From positions 8,556,001 to 8,620,000 of the forward strand of contig CM060733.1 in NCBI GenBank assembly GCA_030704615.1: a stretch of 64,000 nt of DNA, read 5' to 3'. The notes beneath the pieces were generated by a model, which saw only the letters and a program-made list of their open reading frames with translations, did no database searches and was not told the DNA's origin. The DNA comes from Takakia lepidozioides. Lineage: Eukaryota > Plantae > Bryophyta. Shown in pieces: positions 2,849 through 51,042 of this stretch. Position numbers and translations under genes: made by a program. Numbering within the stretch: the first letter of the stretch is position 1; the number at the start of each line of letters is the position of its first letter.

Positions 2849-3560
2849 ATGTCCAGGGAGGGAGACAAACTCGCTCGATTTCATTCCAATGCAGGTAGTC
2901 TTTCACTGACTGCCACTGCAGATGACGATGGGTTTGCAGTTGTGGATGAGCTGGTTACAATGTTCTCTCTTGAATTGGGTTCTCTGCTTGTTCAAAAAGA
3001 AGTGTATGACGAGGATGGGAATTTGGATTCTGGGCACTTGCAAAAACCATTGGTTGGTGAGTGTGGGAGGAAGTGGAGAGTCCTTCCAGGCACATACCGG
3101 GTCCTTGGAAAAGAGAGAAGACAATCAGCAGGATCAGTAGTTACCCCTGGCACTGCAGCATCGGTTGTTCAGCAGAAGGGCACAGTTCATGTGAAACAAG
3201 AGGTGAGCACATCCACTACATTCGTGACTCTTTCAGACTCGTCCTCGGAGGATGTTTCTGAGATTCCTCCGCCAGTCCAGACTCCATTCTTGGATGATGA
3301 CGAATTGCAGGAGATAATGAGTTCCAGTGGAGTAGCTGGACTTCTGCAGGGCATGGACAAGAAACATGACGGACACCCTTGGTGCAACATTGAACATCCA
3401 CAATGACATTGGATTGAAATTTCGAAGGTCGGTTTGCGTTGGACATTGCAAGTGCCTGAATACTTCTTGCCCTCGCCTGAGAAACAGCTCTAAACCAAAC
3501 GAAAGTGAGTGGGAAGGAATGCCCTTGAATCCTTTCACACCAGGGCTTGCCCCTCCCAAG
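2849..3560 (+). mobile_element. Frameshifted, truncated Cys/His-rich GCM-like (WRKY-GCM1 fold) transposon ORF
   Basis: MDKKHDGHPWC (ORF 2849) joins, after a frameshift near 3390, NIHNDIGLKFRRSVCVGHCKCLNTSC...NESEWEG..PFTPGLAPP (ORF 3366). From memory this resembles GCM-domain ORFs of bryophyte DNA transposons. It stops abruptly at the CACTA terminus at 3561. Confidence 0.5.
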
Positions 3561-4260
3561 CACTACAACAAAATCCGGCTTTTACGTCTGTTATTTTCCA
3601 GTCGTATCAGCCTTTTATGACTGAATGACTGCCCAATCAGATAAACCCAGTCAGTTGTGACAAATGAGTCGTAAACATCATAGAGTCGTATCTACCAGTC
3701 GTGGAGCTCACTGTTGACGTGGCAACGGGGACGCCTAATCATAGTCATTGATAGGACCATAGTAAATGACTGCGAATCCATGTCAGCTTCAAGTGGAACG
3801 GAAGGGATATGCCACGTGTCACGTCAAAGGGAAGGCAACAGGGTCTTCACGACTGGCATATACGACTTCCGCGGATTAACCCCAGGACAGCACGTGGAGA
3901 ATACCAAGAACGACACGTGGCATGACAGGGTGCCTTCCGCAGATTAACCCCAGGACAACACGTGGATTAGACTGGACATAATACGTGGCATGACAATATG
4001 GAGCGGGAGGGTCTTTCGTGACTGGCATATATGACTTCAGACGTTTAATCCCACGTCCACACGTGGAGTCAAATTATGCAGGATGGGGTGGGGTGGTCAT
4101 TATGACTGGAACATATGACTTCCATGGCGCACTCTGGATACTGCACGTGGCACGAGTATGGGCAAACACGAGGGGTGAAAGTGGCACGTGGCGGAGGCTC
4201 TGTGGATGGGAAGTAGTCGTGTACACGACCGTAGCATTGAAACACGAAAGCACCATTGAA
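3561..4260 (+). mobile_element. CACTA (En/Spm) transposon left terminus with subterminal repeats
   Basis: CACTACAACAAAA at 3561 is a canonical CACTA TIR. It is followed by repeated GACTGGCATATA(C/T)GACTTC-like motifs (~3851, 4020, 4104) and AGTCGT/ATGACT motifs. No convincing right end was found. Confidence 0.7.
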
Positions 4261-4860: not shown

Positions 4861-6575
4861 CCACCGTTGACTGGGGTCAGAAAAGTATTCATTCCACAGC
4901 TTCTCTTCATCTCTGTTACCTGTTTTTTGATACTTTCCTGTTGTCACATTGGCAGTATCATGTCAAAGTCACTCCAAACTATCAAAGGTTCATTCAACCA
5001 GCTAACCGATTCTGATAAGAGGGAAAAACAGGGTGAAATGTGTTGAAGAAGGTGCCTTCATTAGCAATGCCTGATTTTATCAATTGTGCTGATGCTGCTG
5101 CGGCAAAACAGGCAAAGATTGAAACACAGCCTGCTAAGACCAAGCTAACTCTCCTACCATGGATCCACCAACAAGCTAACTTGCAGAATTCAACATGAAA
5201 ATGTAGGGACGACTCTGATAGCAGGGAAAAACAGGGGGAGATGTGTTGAAGAAGGTACCTTCATTAGCAGTGCCTTGTTCTACCAATTGTGTTGTTGCCA
5301 CTGTTGTTTCCAGTTTACCATCTACCCACTTGTAGCTACTGATCCACAGGGAATCAGACCCTAAACTTGTTTGAAATTCGGCCCTCTTGGATGAATCTGG
5401 ACCTCTATCCCCGGTCCTTCAGCTATCCCTGCCTGTGTACAATCATGAATACATCCTCAGCCTTGCTGCTAGCAGCTGACACTGACGGCGTGAAGTTCTT
5501 CCAGCAAACAACCCAACCCTACTTGTCAAAGTCACCCCAAACCACCACAGATCCACCCAACGAGCTAACTTACAGAATTCAATATGCATCTCAGGGCCGA
5601 GTATGATGAGAGGGCAAAACAGGTTGAAATAGGTCGAAGAAGAAGGTGCCCTCACCACATTGTCCTTGATAAGAGGAAAAAATAGAGTGAAATGTGTTGA
5701 AGAAGGTGCCATCATTAGCAGTGTCTGATTTTATCAAGTGTGGCACCGCTGCTGCTGTGGCTTCCAGTTGACCATCTACCCATGTAGGTCTTGTAGCTAT
5801 CCTTCCACAAGGAATCGTAGGTAATGTGGAGCTTGAAATGCGGCTTCTTGGATGAATCTGGACCCACACTCTATCCCTGCTCCTTCAGCTATCCATGCCT
5901 CCGCACAAATCATGCATACATCATTCCTTTGCTGCTAGCAGCTGACAATGACAGCCTACATCTGTTCTAGGAAACACCCAACTCAACTTATCACTCTAGT
6001 TTCTATGCTCAATTGCATCTGATACTCTTTGTAATCCAACATGCATTCACCTTTTTGCTCGATTGTCCCACTGTTAACTGGGTCAGAAAAGTATTCATTC
6101 CACAACTTCTCCTCGTCTCTGTTACCTGATTCTGGATACTTATCCTGTTGTCACATTGGCAGTATCATGTCAAAGTCACTCCAAACTATTTAAGGTTCAT
6201 TCAACCAGCTAACTTGCAGAATACAACATTTAGGGCCGATTCTGGTAAGAGGGAAAAACAGGGTGAAACGTGTTGAAGAAGCCTTCATGAGTTGTGCCTG
6301 ATTTTATCAATCGTGCCGATGTTGCTGCGGCTTCCAGTTGACCATCTATCGATGCAGGTTTCTTGTAGCTATCCTTCCACAGGGAGTCATAGGTGATCTG
6401 AAGCTTGAAATCCGGCCCTCTTGGATGAATCTGGACCCACACTCCATCCGTGCTCCTACAGCTATCCATACCTTTGCACAAATTATGCATACATCCTTGC
6501 CTTGTTGCTAGCAACTGACAATGACAGCCTAGAATTCATGCAGCAAACACGACACTACATCTCGTTCAGCCACAC
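4861..6575. repeat. Degenerate local segmental/tandem duplications
   Basis: Block 4861-5006 is repeated at 6068-6213. The motif GAGGGAAAAACAGGGTGAAATGTGTTGAAGAAGG recurs at ~5019, 5221, 5608, 5672 and 6249, with a shared downstream TTGGATGAATCTGGACC...GCTAGCAGCTGAC in three copies. Confidence 0.85.
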
Positions 6576-27528: not shown

Positions 27529-29124
27529 ATGGGGGGGGGCAGGGATGGGAAGAGCTCTAGAATGGAGATGGGTACCAAGGGTGGAGCTGCAGGAACTGGG
27601 AATGGGGGTGGAGGGCCAGCCATTGCGATCAAGATTAGACAAAGGTTGCCAGACTTTCTGCAGTCTGTGAACCTCAAGTACGTGAAGTTGGGTTATCACT
27701 ATGTGATCACACATGCTATGTTCCTCTTAATGGTACCTGCCTTGATGTTGGTCGCTGCTGAGATACGCAGACTTGGTCAAGAAGACATTGGGCAGCTATG
27801 GGAGCATTTGCAGTTCAATCTACTGAGTGTGTTGGCGTGTTCAGGAGCGCTGGTTTTTGGTGGCACTCTGTATTTTATGTCCAGGCCTAAGCCGGTTTAC
27901 TTGGTGGACTTCGCTTGTTATAAGCCTGAAGATGAACGGAAGTGCACCAAGGAACTTTTTATGGAGCGGTCGGCAGATGCAGGTGTGTTCAATGATCGCA
28001 GCTTGGACTTCCAGAAGAAGATCATCGAGAGATCAGGTCTGGGGCAGGATACTTACCTTCCCCGCGCAGTTCTCAGCATGCCGCCTAATCCATGCATGAA
28101 AGAAGCGCGGTTGGAGGCGGAGCAGGTGATGTTTGGTGCCCTGGATGAGCTCTTCGAGAAGACCGGGGTTAAGCCCAAGGACATAGGGGTCCTGGTTGTG
28201 AACTGCAGTTTGTTTAACCCAACACCCTCGCTCTCCTCCATGATCGTCAACCACTACAGAATGAGAGGGAACATTGTCAGCCTCAATCTCGGGGGCATGG
28301 GATGTAGTGCTGGTGTTATAGCAATTGATCTTGCCAAGGATTTACTGCAGGTGCACAGAAATTCGTACGCCATTGTTGTCTCCATGGAGAATATAACTCT
28401 CAACTGGTATTTCGGCAATGACCGATCGAAGTTGGTGTCGAACTGCATATTTCGCATGGGAGGCGCCGCCATTCTTCTTTCGAACAAGAGAAGAGAGAGG
28501 AGAAGGGCCAAGTATGAGCTGGTGCACACGGTTAGAACTCACAAGGGGGCAGACGACAAGTGTTTTCAGTGCGTGTTCCAAGAAGAAGACGAGACTGGCT
28601 CTATGGGAGTTTCCCTTTCTAGGGACTTGATGGGTGTTGCAGGGGATGCTCTCAAGGCAAATATCACCACTCTTGGGCCGCTCGTTCTTCCTCTCTCCGA
28701 ACAGATCCTCTTCTTTGCCACTTTGGTTGGTCGCAAGGTATTCAACATGAAGATCAAGCCTTACATCCCCGATTTTAAACTTGCATTCGAACATTTCTGC
28801 ATTCACGCAGGAGGGAGGGCTGTGCTGGACGAGATGGAGAAGAACTTGCAGCTGACCGAATGGCACATGGAACCTTCGAGAATGACGCTCTACAGATTTG
28901 GAAATACTTCTAGCAGCTCACCATGGTACGAGTTAGCCTACACAGAGGCCAAGGGGAGGGTGAGACGAGGCGACCGGCTGTGGCAGATAGCGTTCGGTTC
29001 GGGATTTAAGTGCAACAGTGCTGTGTGGCGGGCCCTCCGAACAGTCAAGCCCCCTACACAGAACCCATGGTCAGATTGCATTCATAAATTTCCCGTCAAG
29101 GTACCTGCCTTTACGAGTTTATAA
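27529..29124 (+). CDS. 3-ketoacyl-CoA synthase (FAE1/KCS family, KCS4/9-like), intronless CDS
   Basis: 531-aa ORF with [20 protein letters not shown]-terminal TM helices and catalytic [23 protein letters not shown] and GSGFKCNS. The true start may be the ATG at 27562. Confidence 0.97.
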
Positions 29125-43000: not shown

Positions 43001-45530
43001 GAGGAATGCACAAAGGAGACATACCTGACCTGCATGCCGAGCAGCTGCAATGAGCGCCTGAACCACAAAATTGGCTGACGGGTGCAGAGATAACTGAAGG
43101 AGGTGGTGCCGAAAAAAGCGTTGAAACATTTCCATGTATATCGCATCTGGCGCCACTTGAAGCATCACCTGCATCTCTCCAACAAGGGGTGTTTCAGTCT
43201 TTCAGTCTCTATCTTGTTCCCCTACCCTCTCTTCTTATTTCAACCTCTGAGAAGCTGGAAATGTGCCTAAAGAACAGCTGCCAAAAAAGCAGAAAAGGCC
43301 AACATAACCTCATTACCTTTCCTACTACAAACTGAGACATGAGAATACAGAACAGCCAAAAACTAGTGACTGTCTGACCTCCATAAGATGGCTTCCGTTG
43401 CAATCTTGGATCATTTCCACGGTCTTCTCAACTGAGGCTTTCTCCAACACAACTCCCTCCTTCACCTCCGCTTGCTGACCACACTCCAACATTACTGCAA
43501 TCACCTTGGTAACTGTTGATTTATCCCCTTCCACTGCCCGCAAGATTGTCTGCACCAAAGCCATTCCGCAATTTGAGATATTTGGAGATTCTTTCAATTT
43601 GCAGCTTCTTATGTGCAGTGGGTGGTCGGTCCACCTTCCACATGGAAGGCAGTAGCCCCTCGGAGTGAATTGACACCATAGGTTACGCCTGCTTCAGCAG
43701 CAGTCTTCCTCCATGGAATTATGATGCTCCTATACAAGCATTAAAAAGACTACTGCTGCACACCTTTTCAGCCAGTTTTAGCGCTTTAGACGGATGGATT
43801 TTCACAAAAACTTACTGCTTTGGAAATGTTACTTCTTCAGATAATCTAGAACCACCACTGAAGTGGGCCTTCAGCGATGGGAGTGGTTCTACTCTACTCT
43901 TTCCTTTCACCTCTTCCTTCCCTCTCACCTCTCGTGGCCCCCACACTGCTTCAACAATTTGTACATTTCAAGCCACTATAAGAAGAGATATATCGAGAGA
44001 AGGAACAGAGGCACACAGCAGGAAGGATACTCAAATCCAGGAGTTGAAATTACAAACACACACACACCCCCAATGTAAATGTCCAGGAGTAATCTAGAGT
44101 AATCTGGATCCAGATCTGGATCTAAAATTCGCTGCATAAAAGAGTTGGTGATAACCTTACAAGGGTCACTCACTAAGTGTCAGGGCATCAACATCATCAG
44201 GGACAGCAGTGACTAGCTGCTACAACTTCCTGAAAACCCAACAGTGGATGTGGACACTAGTATAATTGCATGCTCATAAACTTGGGCATGTGTCTGACAC
44301 TGGTAGCCCCACTGAGTATCTGGTACAACTATGGACATAACAGGAAAAATCAGCCATGACATTGGCTCGCACTCGAGAGGCAGAGAAACCCAAAATTATA
44401 AAACAGGGCAGTTTCAGCAGATGTGAACAGCAACCTTCATAATATCAGGACAGTACATGATTTCATACCTGTAATGCAGGACCCCCTGCAGAGCCTGCCC
44501 TCAACTCTACCATGCTTCCCCTGCAACTTTCCAGAATGATGCCTACAAGTGATTTTAACTGATCTGGGAATACCCGGCCCCTTGATCGGGCACTCGCAAC
44601 TCCCCGAGGCTTTGATGCAAGGTTGCCCAACCGTTGTGCAAGGCCGCTTTTCAATTTCACCCCAGCCCCTGATTTTGGGGATGCTTCTAGTGGAAGCCCA
44701 CTACAGAGAGCCAGAAGCTGGCGAAGCACATGAGACCCATAGCGACTGCGCATTAAATCAACAGCATTCTTGCCTTCTTCCACCGCCTGTCACATGAACA
44801 CCATTAATTGGTGAGACAACTCCAAAACAAATGCCATTGAGACTCTAATTTAATTGAAGATACATCATCACCCTAGCAGGCCCTGAAATCCACGTATCAG
44901 ATAAGGAGTGTAAGTTACTCGCTCTTTCTCTTCTTATTATTCTGTCGTGGGTTGTTCCCGCATGAGCTCTCTCTCTCAGATGTGCAGAGGGACACTAAGA
45001 ACGCCAAAATCTATCTATTTATAAAGCCAGAAAAGATGAAGCTGATGGAATAAACATTGATTTCTCATTCCACCCTTCGCCCACTCACCAAACAAACTTA
45101 CCTCACATATTTTCGAAATTGCACGCTCGACCGTGGAGTACCAACCGGCTCCCTCAACACCACCCCCCCCATTCAAAGCGGCTGCCACGGACTTCAGCGC
45201 AGCTTCTGCCACATGAGACCCACCTGGGTCTAGCGACATAGAAGTGAAAACAGGTGTACATTGCTGAAGAAACAATGCTACCTGAGAGATATCACTAGAT
45301 GAGAGAAGAGTTTCCAGCACCCGCCCACATGTGGAATTGCAAGCCAAATGCAGCTCTTTGCCCCGCGCTTCCTCTAATGCGTTTGCGCAGACTGTGGCCC
45401 TCTCCTCAGGGTCCTCAAGTGAACCCCCCTCACCCACCAGTGCAGCTATCTCGGAGAAATACTGCTGGATTTGGGGATCAACCTGCCCCCTGCTTGAGAC
45501 TTGGACATCCGCCTTACCCCTCCTCGCCAT
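40024..45530 (-). CDS. NOP9: Nucleolar Pumilio-repeat protein NOP9/APUM23, multi-exon
   Basis: VDPQIQQYFSEI...CANALEEARGKELHLA, GSHVAEAALKS, YGSHVLRQLLALCSG, GSHLMEV, LSLHPSANFVVQALI, CIVPRMLFLE, DPSGSRVVEAFL and KGHFAELAVHPICSYTVEKCF, with a K-rich C-terminal exon 40714-40024. ATG at 45530. Confidence 0.9.
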
Positions 45531-48041
45531 CGCCACACTAGATCAGACAGATTCCGAGGTTTAGGGTTTAAGGAGCAGGAATTCTTCTGTTGCACCCCAC
45601 CCATCCGTAACAATCCCCATCCATAATATCTACATCCCATGCACCCATCCATCCTGGATTTCACGAAACTCCAATTCCCCAACAATCATTCTCCTATCAT
45701 CCATAATATAGAAAAAGGGAAACGCAACGAGATGTACTAAACGATTCTCGATTCTCGAGATCCTATCCCCTGAAAGGAAGGATTTAAATGTGGTAGGGCC
45801 CGCTGTCAGGTCCTGGCCTCCTCTCCCTCATTACGAGGAGGCCACACAAAATTGAGAGGCGGCCAGATCGCGTTGACCACATTTTGTATGCAACTGCCAA
45901 CTGGGTTCCGATTTGCAGTAGAATCTGGGCGATGCCAGATGGAAGGCAGTGAGCTGCAGAGATTTTAAGAAGTTGGGTCGCTTGGAAGGTGTTGGGGGAC
46001 TGCGGAAACGTGCTGCTTGTGGCGCGCAACTCGCAACTCGAGGATCGTCTTCTCCGACAAGTACTGACCAAGCTGCCTTCCGACACAACAGTACTGTGAG
46101 CGGATAGAAGGGGTTTGATTCGCTGCAATGAACTGGAGGCAACTTTGCTTGCCGGATCCAGTAGTGAAGCTCTTCCTTCTCGTCACCCAATCTGGTCCAC
46201 CGTTAATTATCTTTATGTGCGGAAGATGACTAGGAATCTTGATTCTGTATTTGGTCTGCCTCCAGTGAACTTGACTGCAGCTTGAGTCGCAGGATTGATG
46301 GAGGTCTTTCTCTTTCATCATCCCGAACTCACCACCCTGTACATGTTTCTCTTCAGGGAGGATCCTGTCGCTGGGGAAAGAGATGTCAACATCCGATCGC
46401 TCGTCTCAGTCCAGCAGCTCGGAAATGCTGCCACTTGCTACGTTTCACTATAGTGGGGACAGCCATCCTCACCCGAGTTCAGTTCCCTCACTGGAAGTAA
46501 GGAGGTCCTTCATTGACTGGCCTGGCCTATTCTGTGTGCCTCTCTTGTGCGTTGTCACTTGCTGCGTTGACTGAAGGAGATTGGTCGCCATGGAAGATTC
46601 CATAGTCGAGAGTTCCACCTATAAGTTCAGATCGCCGGATCCTCAGGCCTGGCGTCCCGACCATACAGCCAACTTCAGGTGGGATTTTTCAGCCATGTAG
46701 CCTTCTCCACTCTTTCATTCAGAAGGAATTCTCACTCTCCCAAGAGCGCCTTCCCGTATGCTGACAGAGAGCTCGACTGTTGAGGCCAATAAACACTACT
46801 TTATCCCATTTGTAACTACCTGTAGCAATGGATACCTTCGTGGGTGTTCAAAAGTCCAAATGAGGTGTTCCCTGATCTCCTGATCCCATAGTTCCGATCG
46901 CGCATACCAAGGTAGTCCAAAAGCGATGGAGCTCTTTCTACCCCTGTGAGTAAATTGAAGTGTTGGTGTCCTGTAGGTTGTTAGTCTTGACCGAGAATTT
47001 GCATTTCAGCAAGTGGACTGCATCTATCCCCATTTCATGTGCAAAGTTTTCCGAACTGCAAAACGAACTTGTTTCTCACATGTTTCCTTACTCACCTGCT
47101 GAAGCCCATCCTTTTCATGATAGAAAGACCAGGTGGTTTGCAGTCATAATTAGTTTCGGTGTAGTATGTTACTCTACAGTTTTCGAATCTTCATCATCAT
47201 TTCTTCCACCAGGCTGTTTACCTGCAGTTATGCCTAGGTATCCACTGAAGTATTATGTCTATTAAGTCTATGAACTTGTTTGACCACATCTTTTGGTTAA
47301 GAGGCCTGATCTGTAATACAGAACTGCTCAAAGATCAGCTTAGGAGGTTATTATGTGTTCCTTGTCACCTGACCATTGGAGGATGTACTCAAGGGTTAGT
47401 AACTTGGGCCTTGTGTGAGAACAACTTAGGGAGCTTTGTGTAAACTTGCCTGGCAGACCTGATACCCTTGGCCTGAATATCTCAGCATGGCTAGTCTGAG
47501 CTGCAGGATGATGCACCTGTAAACCCATTTTTCTGCACTTAGTGGAACTCTTTTTATGTTTCTATTGTAGCATTTACGGTTCCTAGTTCCACTTATTTCC
47601 TGATCATCTCTCAATGAAGTTGAGCAATTGTAAGTTGAAACATAATCCCAGAAGTCGTCTTGGATGACATCTATGTCTGACTCAGCTCGGTTACTTGCTT
47701 CTTATCTTTAGCTTGTTGGTCCTTGGATCTTGTAGAGATTTACATGGTAGAGTCCAAAATTGTCTTGTACCGTTTCCAGATTTCATCCAGCAAAAATCCT
47801 CCCTCCTGTCGATGGTGACCAAGGCATCCGAGTCATCTGAGTCATCAACAGCTACCTTTTACACCAAGGTCCCTTCAAGTACCTTGTATCAGTTTTGTAC
47901 AAGGTAGTCATAATCTGGGCTATAGGTGATTTAATGGAAGCCTCTTTGTCTAGGCACATGTTTTATTCACCTATATTATGTTTGTGTACTTGGGTAGCTG
48001 CCAGGCTAATCAAAAGCAGAGTTTTCTGGTGATCCAGGTCT

Positions 48042-51000
48042 ATGAATGATTCTAGCGTGACTTTGGGCACACTTGAAATATCCAAGAACCTACTTGAAAA
48101 TGGATGGTTATATTCTTCTAAAGCGTATAAATTGAGGCATGCTGTTGTTGGGAAGAACGTAGTGGTTGAAGATGATTCGAAGACGAAGATTCGCTGGATT
48201 GCATTTCCTGGCACTCACAACCATGAAGACTTCATCACCGATTCCAAGTTTGGAGAGGTTGAACTCACTTCCCTGAAGCCAAGTGAGGAGGGTCCCAAGC
48301 AGCACTATGGCCATGGCTTTGAAGGGCTCCATGACAATGTGGCCAACCCTGTGCTTGTGCACAAGGGATTCCTAATGCGATTTTTGAAGATTATGGAGAG
48401 TGACACACTGTGCAATGCTGTGAAGGTTTGGATCTAATTCTCATCAGTGTTGCTCTAAATATATCAGATTTTACATGTACATCAATCACAGCAGATTTGC
48501 AAAATCAGTGAAAACTTAACATCTAATGAATCTCGAAGGATTTTTAATGGTGCAAGAACTTTGCTGTCCTAAAATCAAGCCTTGTGGTGATATTGAGTGC
48601 AATTTCCTCAATGTTTCTTACCCTTTGAACTAAGGAGCCTCTGTTAGTTATACAGACTCGCACCTTAGTATGGCAAGCATACGCCTTGCCTTTCTCAGTA
48701 GAAATTACGTTGATCGGGCCATGAAGATTGGAGGTCTGCCAGCAAATGCTGTTGAGGTGCGGGAGTTTTTTCTGTTTAGGAGTATGCCAGTCCATCCAAG
48801 AGTGAAGAGTGCTATTTAAACTGTTAAATGCAGGAGAATGACACCTGGAAAAACAACGGAATGAAGTATATAGTCTTTACAGGCCACTCACTTGGTGGAG
48901 CAATTGCGGTGCTGGCCACAGCTCAACCAACAGAAGACAGAAATTATGGTGTAAACTCAATCAATGCAAAGATAAGTAAGCCATGCTGTCTCACATATGG
49001 TGCGCCCTTGATTGGTGATGCGAAGCTGGCAGAGGCCGTACGCCGTGAAGGCTGGGAAAGGCAGCTATGCCATGTTGTGTCACGGCATGACATCGTCCCC
49101 CGCATTCTCCTTGCCCCCCTCACTTCATTGGACAAGCCATTGAAGGCCGTGATTCCATTTTGGCTGAGACAGATGATGAAGGACAAGCGTAATCCAGAAG
49201 CCCCAGATCAGGTTGATGCACACAACTTGGAGTTTGCTACTGCTGTACAAGGTGGGACACAAATTGGCTGGCTTTTGTCTTGGTTTATAAAGCCCACTGA
49301 TGATAGACCTGATCAGGGTGAGGCACGCAACCTATTACGTGTTGTAATGGAGGGGGCTGGAAAGGTGGTGATGGCAACCTCAACAGCCTTCTCAGTGTTG
49401 AGTTTTTGCAAGAATGTATTCAAAAACAGCCCCTACAGGCCATCTGGTACCTTCATCTTTTGCAGCAAGTCTGGGGCAGCAAGCCTGGACAATCCTGCCA
49501 TAGTCCTTCAGATGCTACATGTCACAATGCAGGAGCTAGATAACAGTCCTGGTGATTGGATCTGCGAACATATATAATATGATGAACTGGTGACAGGGAT
49601 GGAAGAGGTGAACAATGTGGACACTTTGGTAACCATGGCATTGTCAGAGACAAAATCACCTTTACAGATTGCAAACCTGCTGCAGCTTGACATCATTACC
49701 AAGGGAGTTCAGGTGAAGTTCTTCTTTTTCTCCTTTTTTCCTTTCACTGTGTGACTGGCAAGTTCCACGACAGCCACACAGCTATTGGAGCAGCCATGCT
49801 GAAGTCAACGTCATCCTTTGTAGTCTGATGGTAAATCCAACCCATAAATTAGCAATCAATGACTTGTAGCCTGATTGTTGTCAGCTTTGTGGGTGGTCTG
49901 GTCATTCCGGTCATAGTGTCGTGTAGTGGGAGAACCAGTGTCACACAGGACAATGCCCTCAAGGGTAAAGCATAAACGACATCAATGGCAGGGGAATGAT
50001 GATGGAGAATGTCCTCCCTAGCCTGATGTTCCCCTGCACAGCCATTCAAGCCCAAGACATTCCTATTTAGTATGAGGACGAAGGCCCTGATGAGATGAGT
50101 TCTGTGACAGAATATGAACCATTTGGTCAGGCATCTCTCTGGGTCCTCACTACATGTTAGAGGATGTGGCAGTGGATGCTGTTTGATGAAGGTAGTGCTC
50201 AAAGGTAGGAAATATGATATTCATGAAATAACTTGACTCTCTCTTAAGAAAGGACCTTTGATTTTTGATCCAGCATCTACAACTTTTCAAGTCATTCCAG
50301 TGGGCGGAGACAACTAAGCAGACGCTTCGCTATCAATAGTGCAGGTCGCCTCGCCAAATTCAGAAAGGTGCTTGTGGCCATGATTGAGTTGGAGTGGTTT
50401 AAAATGGAATGCGAGGAGCAAGGAGTGTACTACTATGATGTGTGCAGGGGGAGGGGAGCAGCTCATGGAAGTTTCGAAGGCTAATGTTTTGGCAGCCATG
50501 AAGCACCCATGGTGCTTGGTAACTTCTGGGACGAGACAATGGAGATGTATGAGCAAAAGCTGCTACCTGATAATTTTCAAGCCCAAAACAAATGGGTCAA
50601 TCATGGCCACTCGTACCGTTTGTTGGTGGAGCCTTTGGACATTGCCAACTATTATCGTCTGGGCAAAGACAAGGACACTGGCCATTACATGAGGCCACAC
50701 CACTATGCAATCTTAGAGAAGTGGTGGACAGACAAGAGGGGAAACAAATTCCACAAACCTGGAAGTTTGACACGAGACTCACAATTGTGGGCCAAGAAGG
50801 AAAAGGCAGAACAATATCTGACAGACACAGTGAATGATGGTGTGCAGGGTGGTAAGGAACTTCGCAAGTTTGAGGAGGATGTTCTGGCTCAGTACCAGGA
50901 AATGAAAATTGCTGACGACCTGAAAAAGAGTAGCTGGAAGGAGTGGTGGCGCAGGTATCGGAAATCGCTCCCTGCAAAATCTGACTTAGCAGAACGATTT

Positions 51001-51042
51001 GACTCATGGTTGTTTTATAAGGAAGGCAACGCGTGTGGGTGA
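48042..51042 (+). pseudogene. EDS1/PAD4-family gene (lipase-like plus EP domain), disrupted
   Basis: Exon ~48039-48425 has IAFPGT and VHKGFLMRF. Exon 48834-49712 has VFTGHSLGG, CLTYGAPLIGD, HDIVPR, SPYRPSGTFIFCS and EH, with an in-frame TAA at 49575. The last exon ~50274-51042 has LEWFKMEC..GVYYYD, LGNFWD..EM..LPDNF, YRLLVEPLDIANYYR and SLTRDSQLWA, with a TAA at 50482 and apparent frameshifts. The 5' end is uncertain. Confidence 0.88.

What the first reader, a model, noticed from the sequence alone, without database searches (positions are those of the whole stretch)
48042..51042. Lipase-like + EP-domain (EDS1/PAD4-family) gene in an apparently non-seed plant
Seen: an S-D-H lipase-like domain is followed by an EP domain (LEWFK..C..YYD, FWD..EM..LP..F, YRLLVEPLDIANYYR, SLTRDSQLWA). 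Established: this fusion defines the EDS1/PAD4/SAG101 TIR-signalling hub, generally described from seed plants and reported missing from model mosses and liverworts. Inference: the host looks like a non-seed plant. If so, the locus points to an earlier origin followed by losses, or to horizontal transfer.
Basis: partly seen in the sequence, partly recalled or inferred. Interest (0 to 1): 0.85.

Follow-up and report, generated by a model that had tools for sequence, protein, structure and literature searches.

The report
Broken moss EDS1-family immune gene
An early-branching moss (most likely Takakia) carries a transcribed but broken copy of the EDS1 immune-signalling gene family, usually described as confined to seed plants, and a second moss has a copy that reads open as far as it is visible, which suggests that this immune hub dates back to the first land plants.

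Summary
Confirmed, with corrections. It is a transcribed pseudogene: two stops and a frameshift are shared by RNA-like contigs of two other samples, so they are not assembly errors. A flanking KCS gene places the host as sister to all other mosses sampled; with a ~325-Mb genome this points to Takakia lepidozioides (inferred). A second, different early moss (Logan contig L002) has a relative that reads open as far as visible. The two form a clade in separate lipase-exon and EP-exon trees, nested in none of the EDS1, PAD4, SAG101 or gymnosperm subfamilies; with lipase-less EP-like proteins as outgroup, seed plants group apart (95/86). Two introns match seed-plant genes closely, a third roughly. 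Best reading: the family was inherited from the land-plant ancestor and lost many times (0.68); ancient transfer into the moss stem remains (0.2), and sisterhood with one Ginkgo gene is not rejected statistically. Papers of 2022-2026 call the family absent from mosses. The scan noted an intact paralogue elsewhere in this genome (s1-473581, unchecked). Function untested.

The parts
46590..46678 (+).
   Evidence: GT-AG joint 46678|48038 in contigs of X5 and X6; in frame with exon 2
46679..48037 (+). Intron 1, 1359 nt, phase 2
   Evidence: Cryptomeria gene has an intron of apparently the same phase near its N-terminus, position only roughly comparable
48038..48425 (+). Exon 2, N-terminal part of the lipase-like domain
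   Evidence: 33-40% identity to Ginkgo EDS1-family proteins; no Pfam hit on its own
48249..48257 (+). FGE tripeptide, aligned with the same motif in Ginkgo proteins
48426..48833 (+). Intron 2, 408 nt, phase 0; same phase and within two residues of the intron of Cryptomeria and Magnolia genes
48834..49712 (+). Exon 3, core lipase-like domain with Ser (48888-90), Asp (49089-91), His (49569-71)
   Evidence: Pfam Lipase_3 E 2.3e-16; PDB EDS1/PAD4 E 1e-27 to 1e-26; triad columns
49395..49421 (+). Hydrophobic helix before SPYRP, aligned with the EDS1 alpha-H ('LLIF') region; absent from angiosperm PAD4/SAG101 rows
   Evidence: alignments
49575..49577 (+). Premature stop TAA, two codons after the triad His
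   Evidence: covered without differences by X5 and X6 contigs
49713..50273 (+). Intron 3, 561 nt, phase 0; same place and phase as the last intron of Cryptomeria and Magnolia genes
50274..51042 (+). Exon 4, EP domain, ending at TGA 51040-42
50310..50325 (+). Approximate place of a one-base frame break (the spliced frame stops at TAG 50337-39; homology continues in the +1 frame)
   Evidence: no gap in X5/X6 contigs
50482..50484 (+). Second premature stop TAA in the EP frame, inside an 18-nt excess over homologues (alternatively two compensating indels)
50590..50592 (+). Lys at the position of Arabidopsis PAD4 K380 (EP cavity)
   Evidence: numbering; role of K380 from PMC12266115
50665..50667 (+). 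Lys at the position of Arabidopsis EDS1 K478
   Evidence: numbering
50701..50703 (+). Codon at the position of Arabidopsis EDS1 R493: His in the window, Arg in samples X5 and X6 and in L002
   Evidence: role of R493 from 10.1101/572826
45018..45542 (-). First exon of the NOP9-like neighbour, head to head with the EDS1-family gene
   Evidence: Pfam PUF_NOP9 E 6e-9
27529..29121 (+). Intronless 3-ketoacyl-CoA synthase used as host marker

Best explanation
Shown: this is a spliced, transcribed but inactivated copy of an EDS1-family (lipase-like + EP domain) gene in a moss genome, and it groups with an apparently open copy in a second early-branching moss, outside the seed-plant subfamilies. Inferred: the family was already present in the common ancestor of mosses and vascular plants and was lost independently in peat mosses, arthrodontous mosses, liverworts, hornworts, lycophytes and most ferns; this copy is one more such loss, a recent one. 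Inferred from established knowledge: before it broke, the protein worked as one half of an EP-domain dimer (with its paralogue or with itself) that binds small nucleotides made by TIR domains of the moss's own NLRs and passes the signal to an RPW8-type helper NLR. Today this copy yields at most a lipase-only fragment of about 406 residues, probably nothing useful.
For: Domains and fold. Three GT-AG joints and all three lesions in two other samples of two other studies; even DNA depth across flank and gene, 26.5 vs 27.4. Eight of nine coding substitutions between samples change the amino acid (P 0.30 under neutrality, 0.004 if 40% expected) and a further 4-nt frame break exists in X5/X6. Host: KCS sister to Sphagnum + other mosses (88/82, 90/84); 5084 windows of 64 kb against 325 Mb for Takakia (PMC13120521). 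Second moss: P0121/L002; KCS genes from the same runs fall among non-Sphagnum mosses (99/95) and the transporter on the same contig groups with moss-like sequences. Moss pair 99/97 (EP exon) and 92/93 (lipase exon); with EP-like outgroup: mosses 97/81, seed plants 95/86. AU rejects the pair with Ginkgo P0281/P0283 (p 0.010) and the window alone with the P0122 clade (p 0.018). Shared introns. GC3 0.49-0.55, within the range of neighbours 0.47-0.60. EDS1 K478, PAD4 K380 and (in most alleles) EDS1 R493 positions kept. Moss TIR domains mostly need EDS1 when expressed in tobacco (10.64898/2026.05.20.726525).
Against: Many independent losses are needed: no EP protein named from Physcomitrium, Ceratodon, Sphagnum, Marchantia, Riccia, Selaginella or Diphasiastrum appeared among the listed hits (top hits only, many unnamed). 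AU does not reject the moss pair as sister to Ginkgo P0122 (p 0.29, 0.28, 0.19). Raw identity window-L002 (40%) is no higher than window-Ginkgo (40-42%), branches are long, and the outgroup tree has only 125 columns. One host marker only was put on a tree. No ligand binding, dimer or helper NLR was shown; no RPW8 note exists for this genome, which shows nothing either way.
Confidence: 0.68

Rival explanations
1. Ancient horizontal transfer: the lipase-EP fusion arose in vascular plants and a genomic, intron-bearing copy moved from a stem seed plant or other early vascular plant into the moss stem lineage before Takakia split off, then was kept in a few early mosses.
For: Patchy presence; closest named relatives are gymnosperm genes; sisterhood with Ginkgo P0122 not rejected; shared introns fit DNA transfer equally well. 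From memory, not held: Qin et al. 2024 trace EP proteins to the vascular-plant ancestor.
Against: With outgroup, seed-plant members are one clade without the mosses (95/86); both mosses keep a His in the G-H-x-Y-R motif shared with three of six outgroup proteins, where most seed-plant rows have Thr; the Takakia lineage split about 390 million years ago (PMC13120521), before crown gymnosperms by my knowledge, so the donor must be an extinct or unsampled stem lineage.
Confidence: 0.2
2. Later or repeated transfers from a Ginkgo-like gymnosperm into each moss, the moss pair being a long-branch artefact.
For: Identity to Ginkgo equals identity between the two mosses; FastTree warns that long branches meet.
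Against: The pair holds under a site-mixture model in two independent exons; 13 residues are shared by the two mosses and by at most 2 of 51 seed-plant rows; the window alone with the P0122 clade is rejected (p 0.018).
Confidence: 0.07
3. The copy is not dead: the 406-residue lipase-only product, with its triad, has a function of its own, as the PAD4 lipase-like domain does against aphids.
For: Spliced transcript in two samples; the frame is open from 46590 to just after the triad His in this individual; precedent cited in PMC12266115's reference list.
Against: Both other samples carry four extra bases at 48937 that break the frame shortly after the catalytic Ser; substitutions are mostly non-synonymous; a stop upstream of the last intron invites nonsense-mediated decay (established knowledge).
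Confidence: 0.05
4. Assembly chimera or seed-plant contamination.
For: The DNA runs with full coverage may be the source of the assembly; contigs break at a small repeat near 47600.
Against: Three samples in three studies with the same species label hold it; RNA-like contigs join all four exons across that break; depth equals that of the flank; no seed-plant protein exceeds about 45% identity; base composition matches neighbours.
Confidence: 0.02

Closest known systems
EDS1/PAD4/SAG101 family of seed plants (Arabidopsis 7XDD/7XEY/7XJP, rice 8ZF0)
   Same: Lipase_3 + EDS1_EP architecture, S-D-H triad (as EDS1 and PAD4), EP fold, cavity Lys/Arg positions, last two introns
   Different: Host is a moss; not an orthologue of any one of the three in trees; mixes traits: EDS1-type helix before SPYRP, PAD4-type K380, Met at the PAD4 R314 position as in SAG101 and Ginkgo; this copy is broken
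Gymnosperm EDS1-family expansions, closest Ginkgo Gb_07529 (P0122) and Gb_18098/Gb_22765 (P0281/P0283)
   Same: Best named hits for every exon, 33-43% identity; four-exon layout as in Cryptomeria SUGI_0204870
   Different: Moss pair sits on a long stem outside these clades; grouping with P0281/P0283 rejected, with P0122 alone not rejected
Fern 'EP' homologues reported from transcriptome orthogroups (PMC12512272, citing Ali et al. 2025) and EP proteins of vascular plants (Qin et al. 2024, from memory)
   Same: Both already push the family beyond seed plants
   Different: Neither reaches bryophytes as far as I could read; I found no named fern member among my listed hits and could not check those claims
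Short lipase-less EP-like proteins (P0168, P0188, P0222, P0263, P0266, P0269); 'EP-like sequences in green algae' of 10.64898/2026.05.20.726525
   Same: Pass the EDS1_EP cut-off and share the core motifs
   Different: No lipase domain in the predicted proteins, much more divergent; hosts not identified

Membership tests
EDS1 family (lipase-like + EP) | N-terminal class-3 lipase-like domain closest to EDS1/PAD4 | tested here: met
   Pfam E 2.3e-16; PDB top hits PAD4/EDS1 E 1e-27 against fungal lipases E 1e-3
EDS1 family (lipase-like + EP) | C-terminal EP domain, HMM match over at least 50 residues (criterion of 10.1101/572826) | tested here: met
   PF18117 118.7 bits over 155 residues; fold match
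EDS1 family (lipase-like + EP) | Both domains in one transcript | tested here: met
   Splice joints of all four exons in contigs of X5 and X6; one DNA contig spans 47608-51900. RNA status of these runs is a guess by the tool, but precise GT-AG skips support it
EDS1 family (lipase-like + EP) | Open reading frame giving a full-length protein of 500-700 residues | tested here: not met
   Two stops and a frame break, shared by three samples: a pseudogene of the family. L002 reads open across its four visible exons (read by eye; 5' end missing)
EDS1 family (lipase-like + EP) | S-D-H triad (EDS1, PAD4) | tested here: met
EDS1 family (lipase-like + EP) | Hydrophobic alpha-H ('LLIF') helix and FGE motif, said to be absent from non-seed lipases | tested here: inconclusive
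   A hydrophobic helix aligns with the EDS1 region but with other residues; an FGE lies in exon 2 aligned with Ginkgo, but I could not confirm that it is the motif the paper means
EDS1 family (lipase-like + EP) | EP cavity residues (EDS1 K478, R493; PAD4 R314, K380) | tested here: inconclusive
   K478 and K380 kept; R493 is His here but Arg in two other samples and L002; R314 position is Met as in SAG101 and Ginkgo
EDS1 family (lipase-like + EP) | Dimerisation, binding of pRib-AMP/ADP or ADPr-ATP, recruitment of ADR1/NRG1 | not testable with these tools
   needs biochemistry on the intact paralogues
EDS1 orthogroup (strict) | Clade with angiosperm EDS1 | tested here: not met
PAD4 orthogroup (strict) | Clade with angiosperm PAD4 | tested here: not met
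   no AU test run for this grouping
SAG101 orthogroup (strict) | Clade with angiosperm SAG101; decayed triad | tested here: not met

The most novel reading that the evidence does not exclude
Early mosses keep a pre-duplication EDS1-family protein that still senses TIR-made nucleotides, so the TIR-EDS1-helper NLR pathway is ancestral to all land plants; and the EP domain itself descends from stand-alone TIR-signal receptors, as hinted by a lipase-less EP gene next to a TIR gene and a weak MLKL-like helical ORF on contig L094.
Probability: 0.4. Interest if true: 0.9.

Novelty: new variant of a known kind. Interest (0 to 1): 0.74.

Why it matters
Current papers place the EP domain's origin in the seed-plant ancestor (10.64898/2026.05.20.726525; PMC9654257), call EDS1 and PAD4 absent from mosses (PMC11850516), or reach at most to ferns (PMC12512272). 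How TIR-NLRs signal in seed-free plants is named there as an open question. A moss clade outside EDS1, PAD4 and SAG101 moves the origin back to the land-plant ancestor or documents a very old plant-to-plant transfer, explains why moss TIR products activate tobacco EDS1, and offers natural pre-duplication proteins whose ligand, dimer state and helper NLR can be tested. The copy in this window is dead; its value is as evidence, the intact paralogues are the experimental material.

Tried and rejected
Searches were run exon by exon, by reference; the joined spliced protein was not built or searched. Trees were made separately for exon 3 and exon 4, each read with X at its stop. Empty results: scan of metagenome contigs for EP relatives; exact look-ups of the window's EP ORF, of Ginkgo P0122 and of one L018 exon; the scan's notes by sequence (a blank means nothing here); papers naming the L002 runs; Atlas searches gave only family-level or unrelated hits; Dongus 2022 and Qin 2024 not held. 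One alignment script timed out. Rejected: liverwort host (first impression; named clusters and trees say moss); assembly error as source of the breaks; L002 as a Takakia paralogue (KCS from its runs is 84% identical to the window's and falls in another moss clade; no shared non-coding DNA); retrocopy (three introns). CHIP, UAH, NOP9 and LysM neighbours were checked by Pfam only, not placed on trees; OS9 was not checked. Exon 2 alone has no Pfam or PDB hit.

Full report
1. Observation. The ORF 48834-49574 hits Lipase_3 (E 2.3e-16) and 50509-51039 hits EDS1_EP (E 3.6e-34; 118.7 bits against a cut-off of 23.1); a short piece at 50344-50484 hits the first 23 positions of the same profile. Against solved structures both pieces rank EDS1, PAD4 and SAG101 chains first, far above fungal lipases. 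An AlphaFold model of the EP piece (pLDDT 85.6) finds EDS1-family chains as its 23 best Foldseek matches. All searches were made exon by exon; the joined model was left out.

2. Gene structure. Eleven runs were listed; six hold the stretch, from three samples in three studies, all labelled the same organism. Contigs of X5 (2017) and X6 (2021), probably RNA, skip three GT-AG introns: 46679-48037, 48426-48833 and 49713-50273. This adds a first coding exon, 46590-46678, in frame with exon 2, and moves the last acceptor to 50274. The gene lies head to head with a NOP9-like gene. DNA depth is 26.5 on the upstream contig and 27.4 on the gene contig, and RNA-like contigs bridge the one break between them, so the locus is neither chimera nor contaminant. 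GC3 of the exons (0.49-0.55) lies within that of neighbours (0.47-0.60).

3. It is a pseudogene. Exon 3 has TAA at 49575-77, two codons after the triad His. In exon 4 the spliced frame ends at TAG 50337-39 while homology continues one base further on; 70 nt stand where Ginkgo has 23 codons, so one base is extra near 50310-50325. A second TAA at 50482-84 lies in an 18-nt excess over homologues; two compensating indels would explain it as well. X5 and X6 cover all three places without differences or gaps, so the lesions are shared by the samples. Both also carry four extra bases after 48937 that break exon 3 early. Eight of nine coding substitutions between samples are non-synonymous: P 0.30 if neutral, 0.004 if 40% were expected. 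The window's branch is no longer than that of the open L002 copy, so the inactivation is recent on this time scale (inference).

4. Host. The intronless KCS at 27529-29121 is 86% identical to a cluster holding Ceratodon, 81-83% to Physcomitrium, Sphagnum and liverworts, about 75% to angiosperms. In a site-mixture tree bryophytes are one clade (96/93) and the window's KCS is sister to Sphagnum plus other mosses (88/82 and 90/84; the quick tree agrees). That is the place of Takakia (PMC13120521). The scan holds 5084 windows of this genome and a piece longer than 61 Mb; 5084 x 64 kb is 325 Mb, the size listed for Takakia lepidozioides (scaffold N50 83 Mb). The name is an inference from one marker and the size; 'moss-like bryophyte, not seed plant' is firm.

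5. A second moss. Among 1.84 billion representatives the best hit of the EP piece is P0121 (50% over the matched part), ahead of Ginkgo, Taxus, Pinus and Cryptomeria proteins. It lies on a 12-kb DNA contig from two runs that differ at 13 sites (L002, L003), downstream of lipase exons; read by eye, four GT-AG-bounded exons keep an open frame, with two more introns than the window gene and the 5' end missing. Two KCS genes from the same runs fall among mosses: P0006 with the non-Sphagnum mosses (99/95), P0019 with a Ceratodon paralogue (100/100). The sugar transporter on L002 itself is 71-73% identical to, and groups with (SH-aLRT 93), metagenome sequences that I take for mosses (unnamed). So L002 most likely belongs to another early-branching moss, neither Takakia nor Sphagnum; the species is unknown.

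6. Phylogeny. EP exon: window + L002 99/97 on a long stem, joining a polytomy of PAD4-like, SAG101-like and a gymnosperm clade (clade names). Lipase exon: the pair 92/93, again on the backbone between the EDS1 side and the PAD4/SAG101 side. Placing 203 further EP fragments put almost all in seed-plant clades; six lipase-less, divergent EP-like proteins joined the moss pair. Used as outgroup on the 125-column core, they give mosses (97/81) sister to all seed-plant members (95/86), the order of the species tree. AU tests reject the pair with Ginkgo P0281/P0283 (p 0.010) and the window alone with the P0122 clade (p 0.018), but not the pair as sister to Ginkgo P0122 (p 0.29, 0.28, 0.19). Raw identity between the two mosses (40%) equals that to Ginkgo, and long branches are in play, so the root is likely, not proven. 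Introns 2 and 3 match those of Cryptomeria and Magnolia in phase and place (intron 2 within two residues); Cryptomeria also has an N-terminal intron of apparently the same phase as intron 1. This excludes a retrocopy but does not separate descent from DNA transfer.

7. How it most likely worked. In flowering plants TIR domains make pRib-AMP/ADP or ADPr-ATP, which bind a pocket between the EP domains of EDS1-PAD4 or EDS1-SAG101 and recruit ADR1 or NRG1 (PMC12856790). The moss gene keeps the triad, a hydrophobic helix at the EDS1 dimer-helix position, and Lys at EDS1 K478 and PAD4 K380; the R493 position is Arg in two other samples and in L002 but His in this individual; the PAD4 R314 position is Met as in SAG101 and Ginkgo. 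This mosaic fits a protein from before the three subfamilies split. Other notes of the scan list TIR-NLRs and an intact EDS1-family gene in this genome (unchecked); RPW8-NLRs are reported in all land-plant lineages (PMC12512272); most non-seed TIR domains need EDS1 in tobacco. I therefore infer an ancestral TIR-signal-sensing dimer, with this copy as a partner or duplicate that has since been lost. No step of this mechanism is shown for the moss proteins.

8. Comparison with the literature. A May 2026 preprint states that robust EP homology is found only in seed plants; reviews say the same. One 2025 paper reports rare fern homologues, and from memory Qin et al. 2024 trace EP proteins to the vascular-plant ancestor (not held). 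Searches pairing EDS1 with Takakia, Polytrichum, hornwort, liverwort or moss terms found no report of a bryophyte member; subscription papers are not covered.

9. Verdict. A real, transcribed pseudogene of the EDS1 family in a moss, marking a moss lineage outside EDS1, PAD4 and SAG101. Vertical descent with repeated loss 0.68; ancient transfer into the moss stem 0.2; later transfers 0.07; artefact 0.02. New variant of a known kind; interest 0.74, held down because this copy is dead, the root is not proven and function is untested.

Noticed in passing
L094:469-5732 (NCBI GCA_030012885.1, contig JASCQV010002970.1; organism not named by the tools): A lipase-less EP-like ORF (5001-5732, +; PF18117 E 2e-16) lies 4 kb from a divergent TIR gene (469-972, -; E 1e-17). 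Between them, on the EP strand, an ORF at 3309-3650 has a weak MLKL_N hit (E 0.015, below cut-off) and may be an upstream exon. It looks like a TIR enzyme paired with an EP sensor fused to a death-domain bundle; splicing not shown.
   Followed up: partly
P0188, P0222, P0168, P0269, P0263 (P0168 on short ENA contigs L092, L093): Further stand-alone EP-like proteins of 120-220 residues passing the Pfam cut-off; P0188 and P0222 begin with a hydrophobic helix. Hosts unknown.
   Followed up: partly
L002:2-2598: EDS1-family gene of a second moss with two introns that the window and seed-plant genes lack and an acidic insertion of about 35 residues in the EP domain.
   Followed up: partly
window:50701-50703: The codon at the EDS1 R493 position is polymorphic (His here, Arg in X5/X6), in line with ongoing decay of the pseudogene.
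   Followed up: yes
window:46237-46270 and 46351, 46514: X5/X6 contigs upstream of exon 1 show a 32-nt skip with non-canonical ends and small insertions; probably 5' UTR polymorphisms in the 1-kb gap shared with the NOP9-like gene.
   Followed up: no
window:31800-35500 (-): LysM receptor-like kinase gene (LysM and kinase Pfam hits), another immunity- or symbiosis-type gene 11 kb from the locus.
   Followed up: no
window:1-1300: Tandem repeat array giving repetitive Cys/His-rich open frames in several frames.
   Followed up: no
P0123 (Arabis alpina KFK28610.1): 2011-residue prediction with two EP domains, lipase, TIR, NB-ARC and LRR; probably neighbouring genes merged by annotation.
   Followed up: no
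Ginkgo and conifer hits: Gymnosperms hold at least five deep EDS1-family clades that are neither EDS1, PAD4 nor SAG101 orthologues in the strict sense, with large expansions in Pinus and Cryptomeria.
   Followed up: partly
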